DNA from: Ascoidea asiatica JCM 7603
Taxonomy: Eukaryota; Fungi; Ascomycota
Direction of reading: 5' to 3'
Length of the DNA stretch: 64,000 nucleotides
Assembly (NCBI GenBank): GCA_001600695.1
Contig: BCKQ01000001.1
Coordinates: 590,717-654,716, forward strand
Shown piece after piece: positions 11,641 through 58,601 of this stretch. The notes below the pieces were generated by a model. The model was not told the origin of the DNA, made no database searches, and was given only the letters and a program-made list of their open reading frames with translations. The stretch's first letter is position 1, and each line of letters starts with the position of its first letter. A program made the translations under genes and the position numbers.

Positions 11641-12156
11641 TTTGATATATCTTATACAATCGTATGTAATTACAGATAATTATTCAATCTTCAATCAATA
11701 ATTTATCAATAATCTGTTTAAAACTACCATTAAATAATAGCTTTTACTGAAATGAAATAAATAAATCTCAGTCGAAATGAACATCACGTGCCACGTTCTC
11801 TTTCTTTGAATTTCAGTTTTTGCCGTTGAGCTAAAATTGATATTATCTAAGTGAAGTGGTGAGTGAGTGGGATTTGAAGTTTTATTAAAAAGATTGGTTT
11901 GGTGATTTGATATTGAAAAGAACTTGAGAAGATCATCATTAAAGATAACTTTCACAATCATTTGGAAACTGCTGCAGAAGCTTTTATTCAAGAGGTCTAT
12001 TCTGTTTTCAACAGTAAGTGATTGATTTTTTCATTGGTGAATTTCTGCTGGAGTTAATTCCGGTTAAGCTCAAAGCCCATAAATATTTTAGATTATTTAG
12101 TGAATTATAAACTAACAATTAAATCTGTTATATTATTTGAAGAAATTGTTTATGGA

Positions 12157-14499
12157 ATGTCGTCTCGACTCCCAATAAAAAATATTCATCGATTGAGGAG
12201 TATAAATTTATGTACAAAGTTCAAATCAAATTCTATAAAGAATTTTAATAACTTTAAAAGCTTTTCAACTTTCAATGGTAATTCAGTGAAAATAAATTTA
12301 ACTCCATATGGAATAAAGAAAAATGATAGGATATTTTCAGTTCAAAATAAAACTTTTAATAGATTGTTCTCAAATAACTCTTCTGTGATTTATTTTCAAT
12401 ATTCTCATAAATCTCAGAACCAAAATAATGATAATAAGAACGAAAACAAAAAAGATGAAAAAAATGAAAAAAATGAAAAAGATAATAATGATAATAATAA
12501 AAAGCCACCACCAATTAATAAAGATTATTTTAAATCAAAAGAATTTTATCAAAGTTTATATATTTCTGCAGGTTTAACATTTTTATTTTATTTAATTTCA
12601 CCATCAACTAATCAAACAGATGTTTTATCATTTCAAGAATTCAAAACTAAATATCTTGAAAAAGGTTTAGTTAAAAAATTATATGTTGTAAATAAATATT
12701 ATGTTGAAGTTGAATTAATTAATCCTATTCAAACACCATATGGTTCATCAAAATTTGTTTCATTTACAATTGGTTCAATTGACAATTTTGAAGAACAAAT
12801 TGATAAAATTCAAGATAAATTAAATATTGATCAAAATGAAAGAATTCCAATAATATATACTGAAAGACAATCTATTTTAAATTATTTAATACCTTTTATA
12901 CCAACTGTATTATTATTAGGTGGTTTATATTGGTTAAGTAAAAGAATGTCTTCAGGTTCTGGAGGTATTGGAGGTTCTGGTGGTATATTTAGTGTTGGAA
13001 AATCAAAAGCAAAATTATTTAATCAAGAAAGTGATATAAAAATAAAATTTAAAGATGTTGCAGGTTGTGAAGAAGCGAAAGAAGAAATTATGGAATTTGT
13101 TCAATTTTTAAAAAATCCTTCAAAATATGAAAAATTAGGTGCAAAAATTCCAAGAGGTGCAATTTTATCAGGACCACCAGGTACAGGTAAAACATTATTA
13201 GCAAAAGCAACAGCAGGAGAAGCAGGTGTACCATTTTTATCAGTTAGTGGATCAGAATTTGTTGAAATGTTTGTTGGAGTTGGAGCTTCAAGAGTTAGAG
13301 ATTTATTTAAAAATGCAAGAAAAATGGCACCAGCAATAATTTTTGTTGATGAAATTGATGCAATTGGTAAAGAAAGAGGTGGTAAAAATAGTATGGGAGG
13401 AAATGATGAAAGAGAAGCAACATTAAATCAATTATTAGTTGAAATGGATGGATTTGAAAGTTCAGATCATGTTGTTGTTTTAGCAGGTACAAATAGACCA
13501 GATGTTTTAGATAAAGCATTATTAAGACCAGGTAGATTTGATAGACATGTTTCAATTGAAAGACCAGATATTGAAGGTAGAAAAGCAATTTATTTAGTTC
13601 ATTTATCTAAAATTACTTTAGGGTTTGAAAAAAATAATGTAAATGATCAAATTAAATTAGAAAATTTAGCTGGAAAATTAGCTGCATTAACACCAGGATT
13701 TGCAGGAGCAGATATTGCAAATTGTTGTAATGAAGCAGCATTAATTGCAGCAAGAACAGATAGTAAAAAAGTTGAATTAAAACATTTTGAACAAGCTATT
13801 GAAAGAGTTATTGCAGGATTAGAAAAAAAGAGTAGAGTTTTATCACCAGATGAAAAAAAGACAGTTGCATATCATGAAGCAGGACACGCAATTTGTGGAT
13901 GGTTTTTAAAATATGCAGATCCATTAATTAAAGTTAGTATTATTCCAAGAGGTCAAGGAGCATTAGGGTATGCACAATATTTACCACCTGATCAATATTT
14001 AATTTCAGAAGAACAATTTATGGATAGAATGACAATGGCACTTGGTGGTAGAGTTAGTGAAGAATTACATTTTGAATCAGTTACATCTGGAGCTTCAGAT
14101 GATTTTAAAAAAGTTACCCAAATGGCACAAGCTATGGTTACAGAACTTGGAATGTCTAAAAAATTAGGTGAAATTACTTATGAACAAGAAAATCAAGGTG
14201 GTCAAGGATTAAAAATTCATAAAAATTTTTCTGAAAAGACTTCAAGATTAATTGATTTAGAAGTTAAATCAATTGTTGATAAAGCTTTAATAAAATGTAG
14301 AAATTTATTAAAAGAAAAAATTACATTTGTTGATTTAATTGCAGAAGAATTATTAAGAAAAGAAGTTTTAACAAGAGATGATATGTTAAGAATTGTTGGG
14401 CCAAGACCATTTGAAGAAAGAAATGATGCATTTGAAAAATATTTAATGGGAAATGAAAAAACAGAAAATAATAATAAAGATAATGAAATTTCAAATTAA
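12157..14499 (+). CDS. AFG3: Mitochondrial m-AAA protease subunit
   Basis: Basic presequence, two TM segments, Walker A GPPGTGKT, Walker [27 protein letters not shown] Zn motif; DYFKSKEF and [14 protein letters not shown] are Afg3-like; near BIM1 as in S. cerevisiae; first in-frame ATG 12157. Confidence 0.93.
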
Positions 14500-49072: not shown

Positions 49073-52000
49073 ATGGATATAAATTCATTTTTATTAAATC
49101 AACATCAACAACAACAAAATTTAAATAATAATATTGATTTAAATTCAAATCAACAAAATGAACAATTTTTATTACAACAACAACTTTTAAAACAACAAAA
49201 TGAACAAAATGAACAATTTAAAAAATTAAATTTACAAAAAAATCAAAATAATCAAAATAATCAAAATAATCAAAATAATCAAAATAATCAAAATAATTTT
49301 AAAAAAAATGATGAAAAAACTAAACATTCTTTTAATTTCTCATATACAAAATCAAAAGAAAATAATGAAAATTTAAATAATAATGAAAATATTGAAGATC
49401 CTACTCTATTACAACAACAACAGTTACTTCAACAACAACAACTCCAACAGCAACAACAAATGATGATGATGCAACAACAACAGCAACAACAACCTTCAAA
49501 TAATATGAATGTTCAAATTCCTCAAAATGAAGACTTTATGGATGATGATGAAGAAGATGACGATGATGAAGATGATTTTTCTGATAATCCAACTAATCAA
49601 ATCAATCAATCTCCTATAAATGATGGAAATATAAATCATAATAATAATAATAACAATAATAACAATAACAATAATAAAATCTCAGATCCTGATTTTCCAA
49701 CTTATTTATATCCATCTTCTTTAATTAATGAAAATTCAAATTCTTTAATGGATAGAAAAAAATATAAAGATTATCCAACTGGTTTTATTTCTTATCAACC
49801 AAATAATTCTTTATATAAATTAAATCAAAATGCTAATAATCATTTATCAAATAAAATTGATGAATATTTTAAAAAAAAATATATTATAAAAAATTTTAAT
49901 AAAAATAATAATAATAATAATGATATTTTAAATAATTCTAATTTTCAACAAACTGAAAATAATTTAAATTTATATAAACAATTAATTAAAAAATCTTTAA
50001 ATGATATTAATGGTATAAAATTAAATCCTACAAATAACAATAACAATAATAATAAAAAAAATAAAAATAATAAATTAGATAAAAATTTATTTAAAAATTA
50101 TTATAATAAAGAAATTGATAATTTATTATTAGAAAATTTATCAAATTTAGATGATTTAAATTATGATGAACAATTAAATAAATTCTTATCAATAACTAAT
50201 GATTCAAAAGATAATGATGCAGATAATGACGAAGATGATGATTATGAAGACTATGATGACGAAGATGATGACCTTGACAAAGATATCACCGATAATAAAC
50301 ATAATAATAATAATAATAATAAAGGTTTAAAAAAAAAATTGAAAGAAAATGATAATAAATTAATTGATTATTTTAATGATTTAAAAAAATTAGGTTATTT
50401 AAATGATAATGATATTAATCTTGAAGATTTAAAAGTTTTATCACAATTAGAAAATGAAAAATTATTAAATTTTCAAAATAATTTAAATGATCAACAAATT
50501 CTATTAAGTCAAAATGCTCAACTTAATCCATTATTAAATAAATCAAATCAACAATTTCAAATACCTGAAATTATACCTTCAAAACCAAGACAACTGAAAA
50601 TTAATCAAGATTCATTAAGTCTGATTAATAATTCTTCAATTTCTTTATCTTCTTCAAATAAATTCTCAATTTCAAATCCAAATCCAAATTTGAATCCAAA
50701 TCCAATTTCAAATAAAAATATTTTATTGATTATAATTTTACCAATTACTGAACCTTTATTTCCAGATTTAATTATTCCAGATTTAAGAATTATTAATCCA
50801 ATTCAAAAACAAGCTATAATTCAAATGTCAAATAATAAACAATTAATTGGTTTATTTTTTATTAAAAATCAAAATTTTAAAGCTTTTGATATTATTCATG
50901 ATTCAAATGATATTCATGAATTTGGTATTTTGGCAAAAATTTTAAAATATTCTTCTTATGATGATAAAAAAACTGGTTTAAAACCATTAATTGTTAAAAT
51001 TAAAACTTTAAAAATTATTAGAATTGAAAAGTTTATACCACCTGAAAAAAAAACTGAAGTTTCAAATGATTTAATTTCAAGAAAAAATTCTAGATTAGAA
51101 TTTAAAACTTATGAAGGTATAAATTTAAAAAAATTAGTTTCTTTGGCAAATGTTTCTGTATTAAATTTCAAATATAATGTTAAAAATTTACCTGAAATTA
51201 AATCAAATTTAGAAAAAATTTTAGCTAATGTTTCAAAAATTTATCATTTTAGTAATATTAAAAATTCAAAAACTTTTAAATCGAAATATGATGAATCATT
51301 TTTGAGTTTTTTTAAAGATTCAAAATACATTGTAAAGAACAACACATTTCATAAAAACAATAAACCACATAATTTATTATTTGAAGATGAATTTGATTCT
51401 AATTTTGAATCAAATCCTGATTTTGATAGTGATTCAAGTTTTACTTCAGAAACAGAAGATTTTTATAATAAAAAAAGAAATAAAAATAAAAAACTTACAA
51501 GAGAAAATAGCTTTACTGAAAAAGTAACTTATAAAGCTAGTCCTGATTTTTATTCAACTTCTAATGATACTATTGATGAAATTATTAAAAAACTTTTATT
51601 TGTTATTGATATTTTGAAACTTTATTATAAATTAAAACATATTAGGGATTTTGATTTAAATTATCATTTGAAATTGAAGTTTCAAGATATTTTAAAAACT
51701 TTGAAAGTTAAAATTATTTCAATAAAAGTATTATCAATGCTTAATGAAGAAGTTGCTGAAATTGATGATGAAATTCCAAATGCTTTAGTTCCTAAAATAG
51801 TACCAAATTTTCCAATAGAGAAAAATATTACTTCAAATGGACCTTTAGATCCTCAGATCACTCAAATGTCCGAGATTGGTAGTGAGCTGGTTTCTAATGC
51901 ACAAATCCCAGAAACTAAAATTGAATTACCAAAATCAATAGCTGAATTAAAGAAGAAAAAAAGAGATGTATCACTGGGTTCTGATAGTCCAGAAATTAAA

Positions 52001-52858
52001 GCTTCTGGTGGTACTAATGTTAATTATAAAGGTACAACTGTGACATATACGGGAAATCCTGTATTTAATATAAATTATGCCGCTAAGCCTGAAGATGTAT
52101 CTAATCTTCAAAATACAATGACAAATCCAGCTCAAATTCAAAACCAATTAGGTGCTCAAGTTGGAACTCAACTTATGAATTCTATGGAAATGGGAATGAA
52201 TGGAGAAATGAATTTATTACAAAATCAACAACCTAATGAATTAAATGGTTTAATAAGTAATAATCAAATGAATCCATTTTTGGCAGCTCAGCAAATGAAT
52301 CAAGAACAACAATTAGATCCTAATATAATGGCTGCTATTGGAATGAATAATATGCAAAATGATGGACAGTTAATACAGCAAGCATTGTTACAAAATGCTC
52401 AACAAGGAATGCCTCAAGGTATACCACAAGGTATGGGCCAAGGTATACCACAAAGTATGGGCCAAGGTATACCACAGGGTATGGCTCAAGGAATACCTCA
52501 GGGAATGGAGCAAAATATAGGAGCAATGAATCAGCAATTACAATTTCAAATGATGCAAGATTCATCTAATGTACAAAATCAAATAAATGTTCCTTTAGCT
52601 GGTGGTGGACAAATGGTTGCAAATGAGAACATAGATGCTCAAATCGAAGCATTTAAAATGCAACAAGCCATGCCTTTAGGTCCTTCAAATACTGGAACAA
52701 TTGGTAATCCACAAGGAATGATGATGCAACAAAATTTCAATCCTCAAAGTCAAAATCAAGGTCAAAATCTTCCACCATTTTTACAACAACAATTAGGACA
52801 ACAGCAATTAGCTCAACAACATTTGATGCAACAGAACATACATAATTTGGTAGCCTAA
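49073..52858 (+). CDS. Q/N-rich protein with stand-alone Pim1/Lon N-terminal substrate-binding domain (Lon-N protein 1)
   Basis: 1261-aa intact ORF; segment ~50711-51760 (LPITEPLFP...LIGLFFIKN...DIIHDSNDIHEFGILAKI...DKKTG...IRIEKFIPP...VSLANV...FQDILKTL...VLSMLNEE) parallels the yeast Pim1 N-domain; no Walker motifs or Lon protease motif. Confidence 0.85.
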   Translation: MDINSFLLNQHQQQQNLNNNIDLNSNQQNEQFLLQQQLLKQQNEQNEQFKKLNLQKNQNNQNNQNNQNNQNNQNNFKKNDEKTKHSFNFSYTKSKENNENLNNNENIEDPTLLQQQQLLQQQQLQQQQQMMMMQQQQQQQPSNNMNVQIPQNEDFMDDDEEDDDDEDDFSDNPTNQINQSPINDGNINHNNNNNNNNNNNNKISDPDFPTYLYPSSLINENSNSLMDRKKYKDYPTGFISYQPNNSLYKLNQNANNHLSNKIDEYFKKKYIIKNFNKNNNNNNDILNNSNFQQTENNLNLYKQLIKKSLNDINGIKLNPTNNNNNNNKKNKNNKLDKNLFKNYYNKEIDNLLLENLSNLDDLNYDEQLNKFLSITNDSKDNDADNDEDDDYEDYDDEDDDLDKDITDNKHNNNNNNKGLKKKLKENDNKLIDYFNDLKKLGYLNDNDINLEDLKVLSQLENEKLLNFQNNLNDQQILLSQNAQLNPLLNKSNQQFQIPEIIPSKPRQLKINQDSLSLINNSSISLSSSNKFSISNPNPNLNPNPISNKNILLIIILPITEPLFPDLIIPDLRIINPIQKQAIIQMSNNKQLIGLFFIKNQNFKAFDIIHDSNDIHEFGILAKILKYSSYDDKKTGLKPLIVKIKTLKIIRIEKFIPPEKKTEVSNDLISRKNSRLEFKTYEGINLKKLVSLANVSVLNFKYNVKNLPEIKSNLEKILANVSKIYHFSNIKNSKTFKSKYDESFLSFFKDSKYIVKNNTFHKNNKPHNLLFEDEFDSNFESNPDFDSDSSFTSETEDFYNKKRNKNKKLTRENSFTEKVTYKASPDFYSTSNDTIDEIIKKLLFVIDILKLYYKLKHIRDFDLNYHLKLKFQDILKTLKVKIISIKVLSMLNEEVAEIDDEIPNALVPKIVPNFPIEKNITSNGPLDPQITQMSEIGSELVSNAQIPETKIELPKSIAELKKKKRDVSLGSDSPEIKASGGTNVNYKGTTVTYTGNPVFNINYAAKPEDVSNLQNTMTNPAQIQNQLGAQVGTQLMNSMEMGMNGEMNLLQNQQPNELNGLISNNQMNPFLAAQQMNQEQQLDPNIMAAIGMNNMQNDGQLIQQALLQNAQQGMPQGIPQGMGQGIPQSMGQGIPQGMAQGIPQGMEQNIGAMNQQLQFQMMQDSSNVQNQINVPLAGGGQMVANENIDAQIEAFKMQQAMPLGPSNTGTIGNPQGMMMQQNFNPQSQNQGQNLPPFLQQQLGQQQLAQQHLMQQNIHNLVA
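52403..52513 (+). repeat. Oligopeptide repeat (Q-G-I/M-P-Q-G-M-x) in the Lon-N protein 1 C-terminus
   Basis: QGMPQGIPQGMGQGIPQSMGQGIPQGMAQGIPQGMEQ; 24-nt unit caaggtataccacaaggtatgggc. Confidence 0.9.
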
Positions 52859-53153
52859 ATAATTATTAGGTATCAACTATTAATCTTTAATAATTTCTTT
52901 TTCAAATTTTCTTTATTATAAAGAAAAGACATTTTGCTTTCAGAACCTTTTTTTGTATCCAAGTAACTTTTATATTATAGTATACCGATAAGGCTATGTT
53001 TATGCAGTATATACAGAGAGTAGTATATTTCTTTACATTTTTCATATCTCATTTTTATCTATTTTTTTTTTTCATATTTATCTTTATCATTATCATTTTC
53101 TTATTAATTTCAGTTTTGTTCTTTATAGTTAAGATAGTTTAATGAAAATTTAG

Positions 53154-54275
53154 TTAAAATTTATCTATTTTAGATATAATTAAATAATATGAAATATTGT
53201 AATTATTATCCATATTATAAGTAAATCCACCAATTTTCTTCAAGCATTTTAAATTTGGACAATAAAATTTTCCAGAATTTGGCAAAGAATATGAGTTTTG
53301 AAAAAATTGAGTTAATTGTGGTTTCATGAACTCTAGAAGCAAACTAGAAGAATATAAAAAAGGAGAAGATGACAATATTTTATATGTTGAAGCTAAATTA
53401 AAAATATCATTTTGTTTTGAAGATAAATTTATTCTACAATATTTACATTTGAATGATGTTAGATTTATAGGATTAATTTCAATTTTTAAATTCAATAAAA
53501 ATGGATTATTTTTTATTTTTAAATTGAATTGAAATAACCATAATTGATATAATGGATTATCTATGATAATTGAATTCAAATTATCTAAAGAAGGATGATT
53601 ATTATTGTTTTTGATTGAATATAAATCTAAAAGTTTTTGAAATAATAATAATTGAAATTTGAATGAAATATTTGGATAAGGAATATTTTTATTAATTCTT
53701 TTTCTTTTAATTGAATATAAAGCAATTTTATAAGATAATTTGAATTTCCAAATAAGATAAGATATGATTATTGAAACACTTCTGGAAACTCCAGCAGAAC
53801 AATGAATTAAAATTTTTTCTTTATTTGATAAAGCTAAATTTATTAAAGAAATTGAATTAGTAAAAATTTCCAAAATATTTTGAAAATATTCATCTTTGAT
53901 TTGAAATTGATTACAATTATAATTAGAATCATTTAAATAAAAAGATGGAATTGATTCACCATTTAAAATACTTAATATATTAGTTATTTTATAAATTTTC
54001 TTCAAATCAATTTGTGATTGTAATGGCTTATAAGAACTTAAATATATTCCGGAAATTATTCTATCGATATCAATTTCCTTCTGTGAAATTATATCTTTTG
54101 CTTGAGTAGTTGAATTTAGACTTGAATCTAGATTCAAATCTAAGTTTGAATTTGATTCAGAATGTGAAATTTGAGTGTTATTAATATTAGATTCTTGTTG
54201 AATAGAAGTTTTTTCAATATTGAATAATACATTTTTAATAGGAGTAAGATTTATATCTGAATCTTTTTTTGGCAT
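53154..54275 (-). CDS. Yvh1/DUSP12-like dual-specificity phosphatase with a degenerate C-terminal Zn-binding domain
   Basis: DRIISGIYLSS, ILIHCSAGVSRS (HCx5R), IKRKR..PN.SF..QL.LF; C-terminal FKCKYCR...GKFYCPNLKCLKKIGGF...SKIDKF. Confidence 0.85.
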   Translation of the reverse strand: MPKKDSDINLTPIKNVLFNIEKTSIQQESNINNTQISHSESNSNLDLNLDSSLNSTTQAKDIISQKEIDIDRIISGIYLSSYKPLQSQIDLKKIYKITNILSILNGESIPSFYLNDSNYNCNQFQIKDEYFQNILEIFTNSISLINLALSNKEKILIHCSAGVSRSVSIIISYLIWKFKLSYKIALYSIKRKRINKNIPYPNISFKFQLLLFQKLLDLYSIKNNNNHPSLDNLNSIIIDNPLYQLWLFQFNLKIKNNPFLLNLKIEINPINLTSFKCKYCRINLSSKQNDIFNLASTYKILSSSPFLYSSSLLLEFMKPQLTQFFQNSYSLPNSGKFYCPNLKCLKKIGGFTYNMDNNYNISYYLIISKIDKF

Positions 54276-56528
54276 ATCTATAATTATTCCTCAAAAGAAA
54301 AAGAATATCTAAATAATAAAAATTAAAATCTTCTATAGAATTATTGGAAAAGAAATTATGAAAAGAGTAAATTTAGAAATATAAAAAACATTTCGGAAAT
54401 GATTAAAAAATTGATTATTTAACTTTTAAAAATATTAACGACTTTTAAATCGTAAAATTTCCAGTTCACCAAATATTTGTGATTTAAATTAAGTTTTCAG
54501 TATGCATATAGAAGTAGAAAAAACAGTAGGAAACATAAACTTTTTTTTGGGGGTTCGTGCACAAAAACAAAAACACCGAATAATAATGCTTTTGTGTTTG
54601 TGATTTTGGTCAAAAAGGTGATCTATTTGAGGGTTTAAACTATCAAATAAAGAAATAACTATATGTCTACTCCATTTATACATATTAAATAAAAATTATA
54701 ACAGGAAGGCAAGTTACCCAAAACAAAAAATTACCCGAAAATTATTTAGAAAAGACGCCGTGAAAACACCCAGCACCGATTTCTGCAGGCGTGAGCATTT
54801 AAAACGGCGCTTTCAGCGGTACTAAAGAAAACAAAGTTTTTTAAAAAGGCTCAGTGTGGTCAAAACCGGTCCGGAAAAATCAAAAAAAGTGTATAAAAAA
54901 AGACACTCGCCACAATTGTTTTTGGCTGCTGCAAGAAAGCCTGCAGCTTCCGGTTCCGAAGGAAAGTCTATATTTTTATTTTGCAACTTTAATAATTGGA
55001 AGACTGGCTCTGTCTAAATTTAGAAGCAAGTGGACAATGGAAAAATATTTTTTTCACAAAACTGCAAAAGATCACAACAAAGAAACAAAATTGCCAATGA
55101 GAAAAGCTTTTGCCGGCAGAGTTTTTACTGCTGCTGTAGTAAATAATACAAAATATTTAAGAATTGTGATGATGATAGCGATAGATGATGAGGATTTACC
55201 TCTAAGCGAAGTTCTAATGACTCTTCAAAAGGAGCATTTACAATGATGTTATGATATCATTTCTTTAAAAAACATATAATCAAAAGAAATTAGAATGATA
55301 GTATTTTTTTATCTTTAGTAAAAACTGCTTTAAACAGTGATCATAATTAGCTAATGTTTTTATATCCTTATGGAAATCATGAATTCAAAAAAAAAAAAAG
55401 AATTATTGTAATTATTTTTATTTCATTTGTGTATGTGTATTGATATCAGTTGGTGAGATAGATAATTATGTTCTAATAAAAGATAATACAGTATACTCTT
55501 AAATATTCTTAAACTAAATTTAAACAACAGACATTATAATTTATCGAGATTTACTTCCCAGGTGAGAAATATATAAGACATTGATAAGTTCCTTAAATTT
55601 TATTGTTCTTCATTATTCAAACTATCTAATTACACAAATACTTGAATATATTCAATATAATTATTACTCACTTCACTTAAGAGTAAATAATATCCTATCA
55701 GCATATTCATTCATATCTTATCAACAATAAACTAAATCACCTCATTAATAAACTAAAATATTTTATCCTGGTAGCCTTTTCCTACCAACCACTCTATTTA
55801 GCTTATCTTTACTATTATTATATTTTATATCATCAAATCATTTATTTATCAATCAAATATCGATAATATTAACACAAATCCAAAATTACTATAATCCTTT
55901 CAAAATTTTAGAAATTAAAATAAAAGGCTCTTCATAAAATATTGAAAGACATATTAATCATTATCAAACTATTTATCCTAATCATATAAATCATTCAATT
56001 TACTTCAATATATTTACTCCAATAATCCGATCTTATTAGTTTGTTGCCTTGAAATAAAACAATAACTTATTGCTGGTTATACTTTGATTGTATCTTCACT
56101 TTACTTTATTTCACATCAAATAAGACATATCTCAATCAAATTTAACTGAAATCATTCAAGATCACCAATTATCAATTAAATATCAATTAAATATATTAAC
56201 AAATAACTCCCCCTTTCAATTTAAATAATCTCAAATTATTATAAATCAATCTAATTCAATCTAATTCACTTCAATTCACTCTAATTTACTTAAATTTAAG
56301 ATATTTTGAAAATTCGTATACCTATAATTAATTTTACTGGTCAATAAAACTCACTAGTTCAAAATAATTTTATATTTTAATATTATAATATTATAATATC
56401 TTATAAACTATATTTAACCTGAAACTGGAAATATAATTAAATCTAAATATTGTCATTATTATTAAGTATAGTGGTAATTAATAAGTTTACCATTCAAAGA
56501 GTAAAAACTTTCATCAAAATTTATTAAA

Positions 56529-58601
56529 ATGTCTTCCTCAACAAATAATAATAATTCTGATCATTCTGATCATTCGAATAACTCCAATAATTCAGATAAT
56601 TCAAATAATTCTAAGAAAGAATCTGATAATTCAAGGGATAGAATATTCATACCTTTATCTAAATATCAAAGCTTTATAACTCCAGGTAATATAAATTTCT
56701 TAACAAATTTAAAATTGTCAAATTCTTATTTAAAATCATTATTAACTGCTTTTACTTCAAATACTTTAATCGCTGTAAATATATCAAATCCTTTTAATTC
56801 AAATATTCATATATCAAAAAATTCAAATAATAATACTACTGGTTATTTAATTAAAATTCTTAATTTAAATTATATCCCTTTAGATTCTTCTTATTCTTTT
56901 TTATCTTTTTTACAGTTTCAAACCATACAAAAAATTAATATTGATTTTATAAAAAGTAATTCTTTTCCTTCTATTCAAGTTCAAAACGATTTTACTTTTA
57001 ATAATCAAGATCAATCAAGTTCAACTTCTCAATCTCAAGAACCAAAAATTATTGAATTAAACGAAGCTTTTTTTAACAAAATGAAAGAATCTGCTTCAAA
57101 TACTTCTTCCAATACTAGTAGTAACAAGGTTAATAATAATAATATCAATCAAAATAATAACTCCAATACAAACTTTAATAATGATATTACTGAAATTAAA
57201 ACAAGTTTAATGCTTGTAATTCCAACTAATATATGTCTATTCCCAGGAATGGAAATTAATGATATTAAAATAACAAATCCAATTCAAAAACAAGCAATTA
57301 TTGAAATTTCAAAACATAATTCTGAATCTGTTAATCATAGAATTGCATTTTTTTTAATTAAAAATAAAAATAATTTATCTAAAAATGATATTGTTACAAA
57401 TATGAATGATATTTATACTATTGGTGTTTCTGCAATCATTTCTTCTTTTAGAATTTATATTGACCCAATTTCAAATTTAGAATGTTTAAGTTTAAATATA
57501 ATTACAAAAAATGTTATTCAATTAGTTCAAATTATTTATCCTGTAACAATTAAACAAAAAAATGATGATTTTGAACAATATGAAGGAATCAATTTAAATA
57601 AATTGGTTTGTTTATCAAATGTTCAAAAATTAAAATATAACTTTGATCTTTCAATACCTTCTAATATCACTATTTTACAACAAGTTATGAATTTAAATAT
57701 GAACAATTTAGTTTCATTAATAAATTTAACTCAATCTGAGGCTTTTATAATTTCTCCATTAAAAAATTTTAAAAAATATTTCAAAGCATTATTCAAAATT
57801 TATAAAAATGATTTTATTTTTTATTATTCGGAAATGATAACTTTAAATAAAGATCTGGAAGAAGATGAAGAAGAAGAAAGCTTGAGTTTAAATAAAAAAA
57901 TCAATTATACTCTTCAAAATTTATATGATTGTTCAGTTGATTCAATTGATTTGATAATAGAAAAACAAACTTTTTTGGTGGAACTTTTAAAAATATATTT
58001 CAAATTATCCACACCAAGAACTTCGAATTCTGATAATGATCTAAATCATGAATATAATATCAAACTTCAATCAATTTTAGAATCATTGAATCTTTTTGAT
58101 AGATCAAAAATATTGTCAAATATTTTTAACAAGGAAGGTTTAAAACTTAAATTTAAATTGGTTATTAATGATCAAAATGTCACTGAAAAAGTTGAAAACA
58201 ATGCAACTCCTAAAGAGATAAATAATGAAAATGAACAATCAAGTAAACAAAAGTCAATGAAAAAATCGAAGTCTGATATTCAATTATCTCAAAATGCATT
58301 TTCCAAATCAGAAGATAATCTCAATGAAGTTCCTAATAATTTTGATATACCTCTAGCTCCAGAAGAACCAAGTTCACCAATAAGAACTCCAATTTCTCCT
58401 CCAGCAAGTTCACCAATTATTTCAAGAGTTCCTCTTACTCCAAAATCAACTATTGTGAATGAATCAGTTTTTATCAATAAAAATCCTGATAATAGATTTT
58501 CTTCATCAACATGGCCACCAATGTCAAAGACCAAAACAGAAGAAGAAAGAAATTTTTACTTTCCATACGTAGCATATAATACTACTCCTCCTTTAGCTTA
58601 A
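56529..58601 (+). CDS. Stand-alone Pim1/Lon N-domain protein (Lon-N protein 2), paralog of 49073..52858
   Basis: Shares NPIQKQAII, YEGINL.KLV.L.NV and ID.II.K..F...LK.Y.KL with protein 1; CLFPG, IAFFLIKN, DIYTIGVSA.I and LQSILESLNLFDR parallel the Pim1 N-domain; P/S-rich tail; no AAA+ or protease domain. Confidence 0.85.
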   Translation: MSSSTNNNNSDHSDHSNNSNNSDNSNNSKKESDNSRDRIFIPLSKYQSFITPGNINFLTNLKLSNSYLKSLLTAFTSNTLIAVNISNPFNSNIHISKNSNNNTTGYLIKILNLNYIPLDSSYSFLSFLQFQTIQKINIDFIKSNSFPSIQVQNDFTFNNQDQSSSTSQSQEPKIIELNEAFFNKMKESASNTSSNTSSNKVNNNNINQNNNSNTNFNNDITEIKTSLMLVIPTNICLFPGMEINDIKITNPIQKQAIIEISKHNSESVNHRIAFFLIKNKNNLSKNDIVTNMNDIYTIGVSAIISSFRIYIDPISNLECLSLNIITKNVIQLVQIIYPVTIKQKNDDFEQYEGINLNKLVCLSNVQKLKYNFDLSIPSNITILQQVMNLNMNNLVSLINLTQSEAFIISPLKNFKKYFKALFKIYKNDFIFYYSEMITLNKDLEEDEEEESLSLNKKINYTLQNLYDCSVDSIDLIIEKQTFLVELLKIYFKLSTPRTSNSDNDLNHEYNIKLQSILESLNLFDRSKILSNIFNKEGLKLKFKLVINDQNVTEKVENNATPKEINNENEQSSKQKSMKKSKSDIQLSQNAFSKSEDNLNEVPNNFDIPLAPEEPSSPIRTPISPPASSPIISRVPLTPKSTIVNESVFINKNPDNRFSSSTWPPMSKTKTEEERNFYFPYVAYNTTPPLA

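What the first reader, a model, noticed from the sequence alone, without database searches (positions are those of the whole stretch)
49073..58601. Candidate novel system: two protease-less, ATPase-less Lon/Pim1 N-domain proteins flanking a rewired Yvh1-like phosphatase
Seen: two intact same-strand ORFs share a ~300-350-aa domain with conserved blocks (NPIQKQAII; YEGINLxKLVxLxNV). Established: these blocks align by eye with the N-terminal substrate-binding domain of yeast mitochondrial Lon (Pim1, recalled as LALPIARRPLFPG...YIGAFMLKN...DVITDKNDVYDVGVLAQI...DEKTG...IKIDELFPP...VSLVNV...LQDILSSLNIEHRLEKSLLVLKKE). Seen: both proteins drop the similarity at about that point and have no Walker A/B or Lon protease motif. 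Their N-termini are Q/N/S/D-rich, not basic presequences. In eukaryotes, Lon-N domains outside Lon are mainly known from cereblon and LONRF RING ligases, and neither architecture is present here. Inference: a lineage-specific family that moved the Lon substrate-recognition module to the cytosol or nucleus as an adaptor, holdase or aggregate sensor. It may be linked to the divergent phosphatase that shares a promoter region with protein 2.
Basis: partly seen in the sequence, partly recalled or inferred. Interest (0 to 1): 0.9.

Follow-up and report, generated by a model that had tools for sequence, protein, structure and literature searches.

The report
Yeast proteins built on Lon's N-domain
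Two neighbouring genes in this Ascoidea-like yeast encode long, mostly disordered proteins whose only recognisable fold is a copy of the substrate-binding N-domain of the mitochondrial Lon protease Pim1, without its motor or protease parts; the family is real and confined to one yeast order, but the phosphatase gene between them is the ordinary YVH1 and there is no three-gene system.

Summary
ORF P1 (49073-52858, 1261 aa) and ORF P2 (56529-58601, 690 aa) share a ~340-aa domain (30% identity, E 4e-25).

- **Homology to Pim1.** A 9-sequence family profile hits yeast Pim1 (PDB 7sxo) at E 3.5e-12. In the window's own genome it finds only P1, P2 and PIM1.
- **Fold.** An AlphaFold model of the P2 domain superposes on LonA N-terminal fragments at Z 17.9, 2.8 Å over 204 residues.
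- **What is missing.** Neither protein has an AAA+ or Lon_C domain. The genome holds a separate full-length PIM1 and a second Lon gene taken to be the peroxisomal Lon.
- **Distribution.** An exhaustive search of 1.84 billion representatives found only 8 relatives. All named ones are uncharacterised proteins of Saccharomycopsis crataegensis and Ascoidea rubescens. The sequences fall into groups matching two paralogue types, apparently older than the split of the two genera.
- **Selection.** Against A. rubescens, dN/dS is 0.04-0.31 in the domain.

The "system" reading fails. The middle gene is the single-copy YVH1 orthologue. The P1-YVH1-P2 order exists only in Ascoidea; in Saccharomycopsis the paralogues lie on different contigs with no phosphatase nearby.

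Best reading: an order-specific partial duplication of PIM1, now a non-catalytic peptide-binding module in non-mitochondrial disordered proteins. That function is inferred, and expression could not be tested. This is a new variant of a known kind (stand-alone Lon-N proteins).

The parts
49073..52858 (+). P1, type-1 family member (1261 aa). Contains ~540 aa of N/Q/D-rich low-complexity N-terminus, the Lon-N domain, and a Q/M/G-rich C-terminal tail.
   Evidence: Intact ORF. Orthologue of 1346 aa in A. rubescens at the syntenic place. Closest to Saccharomycopsis P0001-P0003 at 32-40% identity in the domain. No other Pfam domain.
50705..51772 (+). Lon/Pim1-type N-domain of P1 (aa 545-900): beta-rich lobe plus helical lobe, ending at the start of Lon's long helix. 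A low-complexity insert lies at about aa 745-830.
   Evidence: PDB 7sxo (yeast Pim1) E 2.2e-8. PF02190 29.4 bits at window 50735-51127. Own PIM1 31% identity, E 4e-8. DNA-level conservation with A. rubescens is confined to this stretch. dN/dS 0.25 in the beta lobe and 0.31 over the domain.
53154..54275 (-). Intervening gene: YVH1 orthologue (dual-specificity phosphatase, 60S-biogenesis factor). Not part of the family and not a demonstrable partner.
   Evidence: PF00782 DSPc E 3.6e-22. Best PDB match is S. cerevisiae Yvh1, E 4.7e-19 over aa 68-353. Single copy in the genome. Adjacent to the family only in Ascoidea.
56529..58601 (+). P2, type-2 family member (690 aa). Contains a short N/S-rich start, a conserved N-terminal domain, a linker, the Lon-N domain, and an S/T-P-rich tail.
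   Evidence: Intact ORF. A 664-aa orthologous ORF in A. rubescens is 52% identical. Groups with P0004, P0005 and P0007 by tree clade, N-terminal domain and C-terminal motif.
56622..57008 (+). Conserved N-terminal domain of type-2 members (P2 aa 32-160); fold unknown.
   Evidence: Aligns with the N-termini of P0004, P0005 and P0007. dN/dS 0.08 against A. rubescens. Profile comparison with the Lon-N beta lobe is not significant: hhalign probability 2.5%. No hit in the ESM Atlas.
57180..58160 (+). Lon/Pim1-type N-domain of P2 (aa 218-544).
   Evidence: AlphaFold2 with a 9-sequence alignment: pLDDT 72, pTM 0.73. Foldseek top hits are LonA N-terminal fragments at E 1e-9. VIA-align Z 17.9, rmsd 2.8 Å, 204 of 206 residues of 7cr9. 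Atlas nearest models all carry PF02190, with TM 0.80 to a 226-aa stand-alone bacterial Lon-N protein. Own PIM1 32% identity, E 6e-5. dN/dS 0.04 in the beta lobe and 0.12 over the domain.

Best explanation
P1 and P2 are the two paralogue types of a small gene family that appears confined to the yeast order Ascoideales (Ascoidea plus Saccharomycopsis). The family most likely arose when the part of PIM1 encoding the globular N-terminal domain (beta-barrel lobe plus helical lobe) was duplicated. The long helix, the AAA+ motor and the protease were left out. The copy then duplicated again, apparently before the two genera split. The domain is kept under purifying selection, while the flanks became long, fast-evolving, low-complexity segments. 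Shown here: the homology, the fold, the missing catalytic parts, the distribution, the selection, and the lack of a conserved link to YVH1. Inferred (about 45% likely): the proteins work outside mitochondria, since they have no presequence. The Lon-N module would act as a non-catalytic reader that binds short peptide motifs or unfolded segments. Binding would use the same surfaces Pim1 uses for substrates and for Pet20-domain adaptors. The glutamate equivalent to Pim1 E479 in that acidic cavity is retained, in register, in 8 of 9 members. The disordered arms would tether partners, making the proteins scaffolds or adaptors rather than enzymes. The close spacing of P1 and P2 in Ascoidea is best read as a relic of the original local duplication, not as an operon-like unit.
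For: - Paralogy: E 4e-25.
- Family profile against PDB: yeast Pim1 E 3.5e-12; human LONP1 only 0.05-1; no bacterial Lon or cereblon by sequence.
- Profile in the own genome: only P1, P2 and PIM1 (E 9.6e-10).
- PF02190 is above cut-off on P1 and matches 7 of 9 members at E <= 0.1.
- Fold: Z 17.9 to LonA residues 1-206, Foldseek E 1e-9, Atlas TM 0.80.
- No AAA or Lon_C domain. Separate PIM1 and a second Lon gene lie on other contigs.
- Only 8 relatives among 1.84 billion representatives. Named ones are Saccharomycopsis crataegensis (two paralogues) and Ascoidea rubescens.
- The tree gives four well-supported clades that match two types.
- dN/dS is 0.04-0.31 in the domains and 0.6-0.9 in the P2 tail and the P1 domain insert.
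- N-termini are non-basic, whereas own PIM1 has a basic presequence.
- Pim1 numbering was fixed from the 7sxo alignment (chain index + 165; T253/S254, V448 and E479 all fit). The E lies 22 residues after the invariant Q of the LQDIL-type motif in P1, P2 and most members.
- Pim1's N-domain binds adaptor motifs in that cavity (PMC12802967).
Against: - No expression data: no RNA run holds this DNA.
- Localisation is inferred only from N-terminal composition.
- No binding partner is known.
- P2 alone does not reach any Pfam or PDB sequence match.
- The deep nodes of the tree are weak (69/42) and PIM1 sits on a very long branch. The direction 'derived from fungal Pim1' therefore rests on relative HMM scores and shared motifs, not on a rooted phylogeny.
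- Five of the eight relatives come from unnamed assemblies, so restriction to Ascoideales is not proven.
- The word-indexed searches were swamped by low-complexity words and add nothing.
Confidence: 0.65

Rival explanations
1. One reading: a functional three-gene system in which the two Lon-N proteins work with the divergently transcribed Yvh1-like phosphatase.
For: P1, YVH1 and P2 lie within 9.5 kb. YVH1 and P2 are divergent across a 2.25-kb spacer. The same order is kept in A. rubescens.
Against: The phosphatase is the single-copy orthologue of a housekeeping ribosome-biogenesis factor. Synteny is absent in S. crataegensis, where the paralogues are on different contigs with no DSPc nearby, and on two further member contigs. 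The spacer is not conserved at the DNA level between the two Ascoidea genomes. Gene neighbourhood has little predictive value in yeasts.
Confidence: 0.04
2. The proteins are regulators of Pim1 itself: decoys that soak up substrates or adaptors, or subunits that mix into the N-domain ring, acting inside mitochondria.
For: The domain is a close copy of Pim1's own substrate and adaptor platform and keeps the E479-equivalent glutamate. Stand-alone Lon-N proteins in plastids co-purify with the CLPC chaperone (PMC8889267).
Against: No member has a basic, acid-free N-terminal presequence like own PIM1. The long helix that forms the interlocked N-domain triangle of Lon hexamers is not retained, since similarity ends at its start. 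Sizes of 650-1350 aa with Q/N-rich tracts are atypical of matrix proteins.
Confidence: 0.1
3. The family is not a Pim1 derivative. It is an old eukaryotic or fungal stand-alone Lon-N lineage that survived only in Ascoideales, or has diverged beyond detection elsewhere.
For: Stand-alone PF02190 clusters exist in fungi (Basidiomycota) and animals, according to the Atlas feature search. PIM1's branch in the tree is very long.
Against: By sequence the only significant solved relative is yeast Pim1, then human LONP1, with nothing else. Shared Pim1-type motifs include FxxKN, D-x-Y/H-x-x-GV, the I/F-PP-E/K turn and the Q-x-IL helix. No other relative turned up in 1.84 billion representatives.
Confidence: 0.12
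4. Decaying relics of a partial PIM1 duplication with no function, or mis-called ORFs in AT-rich DNA.
For: No expression evidence. Very low-complexity flanks. The A. rubescens annotation calls only the last 228 aa of the P2 orthologue.
Against: Long intact ORFs are kept in two divergent Ascoidea genomes with synonymous sites saturated, and dN/dS is 0.04-0.31 in the domain. Both paralogue types are retained in Saccharomycopsis.
Confidence: 0.03

Closest known systems
Mitochondrial Lon protease Pim1 (S. cerevisiae; PDB 7sxo) and the window genome's own PIM1
   Same: The globular N-terminal domain is shared: beta-barrel lobe plus helical lobe, 31-32% identity. Shared motifs include the LFP start, FxxKN, GVLA-I, the PP turn, the V-L-NV strand, the Q-x-IL helix and the E479-equivalent glutamate.
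   Different: No presequence, no long helix, no AAA+ module, no Ser-Lys protease domain. Flanked instead by hundreds of residues of low-complexity sequence. Cannot unfold or degrade anything by itself.
Bacterial stand-alone Lon N-domain proteins (e.g. Xanthomonas 7cay, Bordetella BPP1347 1zbo) and plant plastid LON-like/iLON proteins (PMC8889267)
   Same: The Lon-N fold is the only recognisable domain and there is no catalytic part. Structural match Z 12-14; Atlas TM 0.80 to a 226-aa bacterial one.
   Different: Those are ~200-aa single-domain proteins that are bacterial or organellar. These are 650-1350-aa proteins with long disordered arms and apparently no targeting peptide. They appear to have arisen independently from fungal Pim1.
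Cereblon (CRBN) and LONRF RING ligases
   Same: Eukaryotic, non-mitochondrial reuse of a Lon-N-like domain. Structural match to CRBN's Lon-like domain is Z ~12-13.6.
   Different: No CULT/thalidomide-binding domain, no DDB1-binding insertion recognisable, no RING or TPR. No sequence-level match to CRBN.

Membership tests
Lon protease (LonA / Pim1) | N-terminal substrate-binding domain of Lon type | tested here: met
   7sxo E 2.2e-8 and 3.5e-12. Z 17.9 to LonA residues 1-206.
Lon protease (LonA / Pim1) | AAA+ ATPase module (Walker A/B) | tested here: not met
   No PF00004 or other AAA match in P1 or P2 at E <= 1. Similarity to PIM1 ends before the long helix.
Lon protease (LonA / Pim1) | Lon_C protease domain with Ser-Lys dyad | tested here: not met
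   PF05362 matches only contigs C9 and C4 of the genome, not the window. None in P1 or P2.
Pfam PF02190 LON_substr_bdg domain family | HMM score at or above the gathering cut-off (28.7 bits) | tested here: inconclusive
   P1 scores 29.4 bits in the six-frame search, but there is no hit when the whole protein is scanned. 7 of 9 family members match at E <= 0.1, best 7.8e-6. P2 has no hit. The fold criterion is met for P2.
Cereblon | C-terminal CULT (thalidomide-binding, Zn-Cys4) domain after the Lon-like domain | tested here: not met
   No such Pfam match in any member. The tails are low-complexity.
LONRF E3 ligases | RING finger(s) and TPR before the Lon-N domain | tested here: not met
   No RING or TPR Pfam match.
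Stand-alone Lon-N proteins (bacterial, plant iLON) | Lon-N is the sole folded domain; short single-domain protein | tested here: inconclusive
   Lon-N is the only assignable domain. However, type-2 members carry a second conserved N-terminal domain of unknown fold, and all members are 3-6 times longer.
Conserved gene cluster ('system') with YVH1 | Neighbourhood conserved across genera | tested here: not met
   Conserved in A. rubescens only. Absent in S. crataegensis and on two other member contigs.

The most novel reading that the evidence does not exclude
A budding-yeast order has taken the substrate- and adaptor-recognition platform of a mitochondrial AAA+ protease and rebuilt it, twice, into cytosolic or nuclear disordered scaffold proteins. 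These would read Pim1-type degron or Pet20-like motifs without degrading their targets. That would be a new class of non-proteolytic 'Lon-N reader' proteins, possibly acting in Q/N-rich condensates.
Probability: 0.3. Interest if true: 0.6.

Novelty: new variant of a known kind. Interest (0 to 1): 0.4.

Why it matters
It is a clean natural example of domain exaptation. The recognition module of an essential mitochondrial protease was separated from its motor and protease, kept under selection since before the split of two yeast genera, and embedded in proteins that do not look mitochondrial.

If the module still binds the kinds of motif that Pim1's N-domain binds, the family offers two things. 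It is a catalytically silent probe of what a Lon N-domain recognises. It may also be an unrecognised piece of proteostasis or signalling in Ascoideales, including the genetically tractable predator yeast Saccharomycopsis schoenii.

The finding also corrects annotation. The A. rubescens gene model for the P2 orthologue is truncated to 228 aa, and the named Saccharomycopsis and Ascoidea members are labelled hypothetical or uncharacterised. It does not open a long-standing question, and stand-alone Lon-N proteins are already known in bacteria, plastids and animals.

Tried and rejected
- Whole-protein hmmscan against Pfam gave nothing for P1 or P2. The six-frame and domain-only scans were needed.
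- phmmer of the P2 domain against PDB gave nothing.
- All three word-indexed searches of the 5.8-billion-protein set were unproductive. Low-complexity words filled the candidate lists, and the searches returned nothing or only a query member. They say nothing about absence.
- The first AlphaFold run with a 2-sequence alignment was unusable (pLDDT 36). The 9-sequence run was used instead.
The aligned register looks plausible by eye, but hhalign probability is 2.5% (E 0.018), so it is not shown.
- A type-2-only profile of that N-terminal domain reaches Saccharomycopsis type-1 member P0001 only marginally (E 0.007 in 24 sequences) and does not reach P1.
- Expression: no RNA run holds this DNA.
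- Taxa of the unnamed members could not be determined.
- The 130-aa GTG ORF in the YVH1-P2 spacer was considered as a hidden gene and rejected. It has no Rfam or tRNA hit and is not conserved in A. rubescens.
Full report
**What is there**

The stretch 49073-58601 holds three genes:
- P1: 49073-52858, + strand, 1261 aa.
- A phosphatase gene: 53154-54275, - strand, 373 aa.
- P2: 56529-58601, + strand, 690 aa.

Next downstream is a DUF5427 (MTC1-like) gene on the - strand. The window is about 25% G+C. It carries ordinary budding-yeast genes, including ACH1-like, a SWIRM/Myb subunit, a SNF2 ATPase, Anp1, Not3/5 and an m-AAA protease.

**The observation**

P1 and P2 share a domain of about 340 residues. 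BLASTP gives 30% identity and E 4e-25, aligning P1 aa 552-877 with P2 aa 227-520.

Neither protein has any AAA+, Lon_C or other Pfam domain. Their open frames extend only 2 and 8 codons upstream of the ATG, so no in-frame upstream extension is hidden.

**Is it a Lon N-domain?**

Sequence evidence:
- The P1 domain hits exactly one significant solved structure, S. cerevisiae Pim1 (7sxo), at E 2.2e-8.
- A profile of nine family members raises that to E 3.5e-12 over profile positions 5-211. Human LONP1 follows at 0.05-1, and nothing else appears.
- PF02190 scores 29.4 bits on P1 (cut-off 28.7) in the six-frame genome search. It matches 7 of 9 family members at E <= 0.1.
- P2 alone has no PDB or Pfam sequence match. 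It does match the genome's own PIM1 at E 6e-5, and P1 matches it at E 4e-8.

Structure evidence:
- An AlphaFold2 model of P2 aa 218-544, built on the nine-sequence alignment without any Lon sequence, reached pLDDT 72 and pTM 0.73.
- Foldseek's top hits are LonA N-terminal fragments at E 1e-9 and TM 0.70-0.75 by target, followed by cereblon's Lon-like domain.
- VIA-align gives Z 17.9, rmsd 2.8 Å, 204 of 206 residues for 7cr9. It gives Z 17.7 for E. coli Lon N-domain 3ljc.
- All nearest ESM-Atlas models carry PF02190.

Both lobes of the Lon N-domain are therefore present.

**Where the similarity stops**

I aligned own PIM1 to 7sxo. Three residues named in PMC12802967 (T253/S254, V448, E479) fix the numbering at chain index + 165.

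The family keeps the Q-x-IL helix and, 22 residues further on, a glutamate in register with Pim1 E479. This holds in P1, P2 and six of seven relatives. E479 lines the acidic cavity that, according to that paper's models and mutants, receives Pet20-domain adaptor motifs.

Immediately after this glutamate, where Lon's long helix runs into the ATPase, the family loses all similarity. So the globular N-domain was copied, without the helix that interlocks Lon hexamers.

**The genome still has its Lons**

PF05362 finds two loci on other contigs:
- A 1339-aa PIM1 with a basic presequence, N-domain, Walker A and protease.
- A second Lon gene with a 1207-aa open frame. I take it for the peroxisomal Lon; this was not checked further.

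The family's beta-lobe profile finds only P1, P2 and PIM1 in the 20.3-Mb genome.

**Distribution**

An exhaustive HMMER search of 1.84 billion representatives with the two-sequence profile found eight proteins and no more.
- The named ones are two hypothetical proteins of Saccharomycopsis crataegensis (P0001 913 aa, P0004 983 aa) and a 228-aa fragment model from Ascoidea rubescens.
- The other five come from unnamed Logan assemblies, and I could not name their taxa.

The A. rubescens locus shows the same gene order as the window: P1 orthologue, DSPc, P2 orthologue, DUF5427. There the P2 orthologue is really a 664-aa ORF. Orthologues are 52% (P2) and about 40% (P1) identical. The window is therefore an Ascoidea-like genome distinct from A. 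rubescens DSM 1968.

A tree gives four well-supported clades: the P1 pair, P0001-3 with P0008, the P2 pair, and P0004/5/7. The deep joins are weak. The clades and their extra features fit two paralogue types that predate the Ascoidea-Saccharomycopsis split. One such feature is the N-terminal domain shared by P2 and P0004/5/7. Another is the tail motifs.

**Selection**

Against A. rubescens, synonymous sites are saturated (dS at or above 1).

| Region | dN/dS |
|---|---|
| P2 beta lobe | 0.04 |
| P2 N-terminal domain | 0.08 |
| P2 domain | 0.12 |
| P1 beta lobe | 0.25 |
| P1 domain | 0.31 |
| P2 tail and P1 domain insert | 0.6-0.9 |

DNA-level similarity between the two genomes is confined to the coding regions, mainly the two Lon-N domain stretches, part of YVH1 and the DUF5427 gene. 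These are functional genes, not relics.

CTG codons are read as Ser, or as Ser/Leu, in this clade (PMC11342251 and PMC6041473, seen). There are four in P1 (aa 508, 517, 939, 968) and one in P2 (aa 443). All lie outside the conserved cores, so the table-11 translation used here does not affect the conclusions.

**The phosphatase and the "system"**

The middle gene's best solved relative is S. cerevisiae Yvh1, E 4.7e-19, aligned over aa 68-353. The alignment includes the C-terminal CxxC and C-x-C-GG blocks. It is the only such gene in the genome. It is the YVH1 orthologue, a ribosome-biogenesis factor.

In S. crataegensis the two paralogues are on different contigs and neither has a DSPc neighbour. 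The contigs of P0007 and P0008 have none either. The 2.25-kb YVH1-P2 spacer is not conserved between the two Ascoidea genomes.

The neighbourhood is thus genus-level synteny. The nearness of P1 and P2 is most simply a remnant of the original local duplication.

**Likely function (inference)**

No member has a presequence-like N-terminus. Most have 0-2 K/R and several D/E in the first 30 residues, whereas own PIM1 has 7 K/R and 0 D/E. With Q/N-rich and S/T-P-rich arms, a cytosolic or nuclear location is the most likely.

The retained fold, the conserved core residues shared with Pim1 and the retained cavity glutamate all point one way. I take the domain to be a non-catalytic binder of peptide motifs or unfolded segments within a scaffold, with about 45% confidence.

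A role as a Pim1 decoy or regulator in mitochondria is possible but disfavoured. Nothing here tests binding or expression, because no RNA run holds this DNA.

**Comparison with what is known**

Stand-alone Lon-N proteins are known in several settings:
- In bacteria (7cay and 1zbo appear among the structural matches).
- In plant plastids, the LON-like/iLON proteins (PMC8889267).
- In animals, as parts of cereblon and the LONRF ligases.

This family differs in three ways. Its apparent origin is fungal mitochondrial Pim1. Its members are large and mostly disordered. It is restricted to one yeast order. I found no paper describing it.

**Verdict**

The "system" with the phosphatase is not supported. 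This is a new variant of a known kind, of moderate interest.

Noticed in passing
L008:8693-10687 (A. rubescens KV454476.1): The public A. rubescens gene model for the P2 orthologue covers only the last 228 aa (P0006). The intact ORF is 664 aa and aligns end to end with P2 (52% identity).
   Followed up: yes
window 56622-57008 (P2 aa 32-160): Type-2 members share a second conserved domain of ~125 aa at the N-terminus, with dN/dS 0.08 against A. rubescens. Its fold is unknown. The suggestion that it is a degenerate Lon-N lobe is not supported statistically (hhalign probability 2.5%). Saccharomycopsis type-1 P0001 matches it only marginally, and P1 does not.
   Followed up: partly
window 52390-52520 (P1 aa ~1108-1146) and L008:1286-5326: P1's tail carries imperfect G-I/M-P-Q-G-M-type short repeats. 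The A. rubescens orthologue has a longer, different run (QGMNQ-type), so the repeat evolves fast. A short N-V-N-Y-K-G ... T-G-N-P-V block just upstream (P1 aa ~980-1000) is conserved between the two species.
   Followed up: no
window 53154-54275 (-): In the alignment with S. cerevisiae Yvh1, the CxxC and the C-x-C-GG blocks of the C-terminal zinc region are kept. The middle Cys/His-containing block (Sc 'C-S-H-F-F') aligns with residues lacking Cys or His.
   Followed up: partly
window 54700-55250: A G+C-richer island sits in the YVH1-P2 spacer and contains a 130-aa GTG-started ORF (54854-55246). It has no Rfam or tRNA match and no DNA similarity at the syntenic A. rubescens spacer. It is probably not a gene and remains unexplained.
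   Followed up: partly
L007:12953-22760 (S. crataegensis BTFZ01000004.1): About 10 kb downstream of P0004 has no called gene in the record. Not examined.
   Followed up: no
window 12100-14499 (+): An m-AAA protease gene (FtsH_ext + AAA + Peptidase_M41; AFG3/YTA12-like) lies in the same window. It is unrelated to the finding.
   Followed up: no
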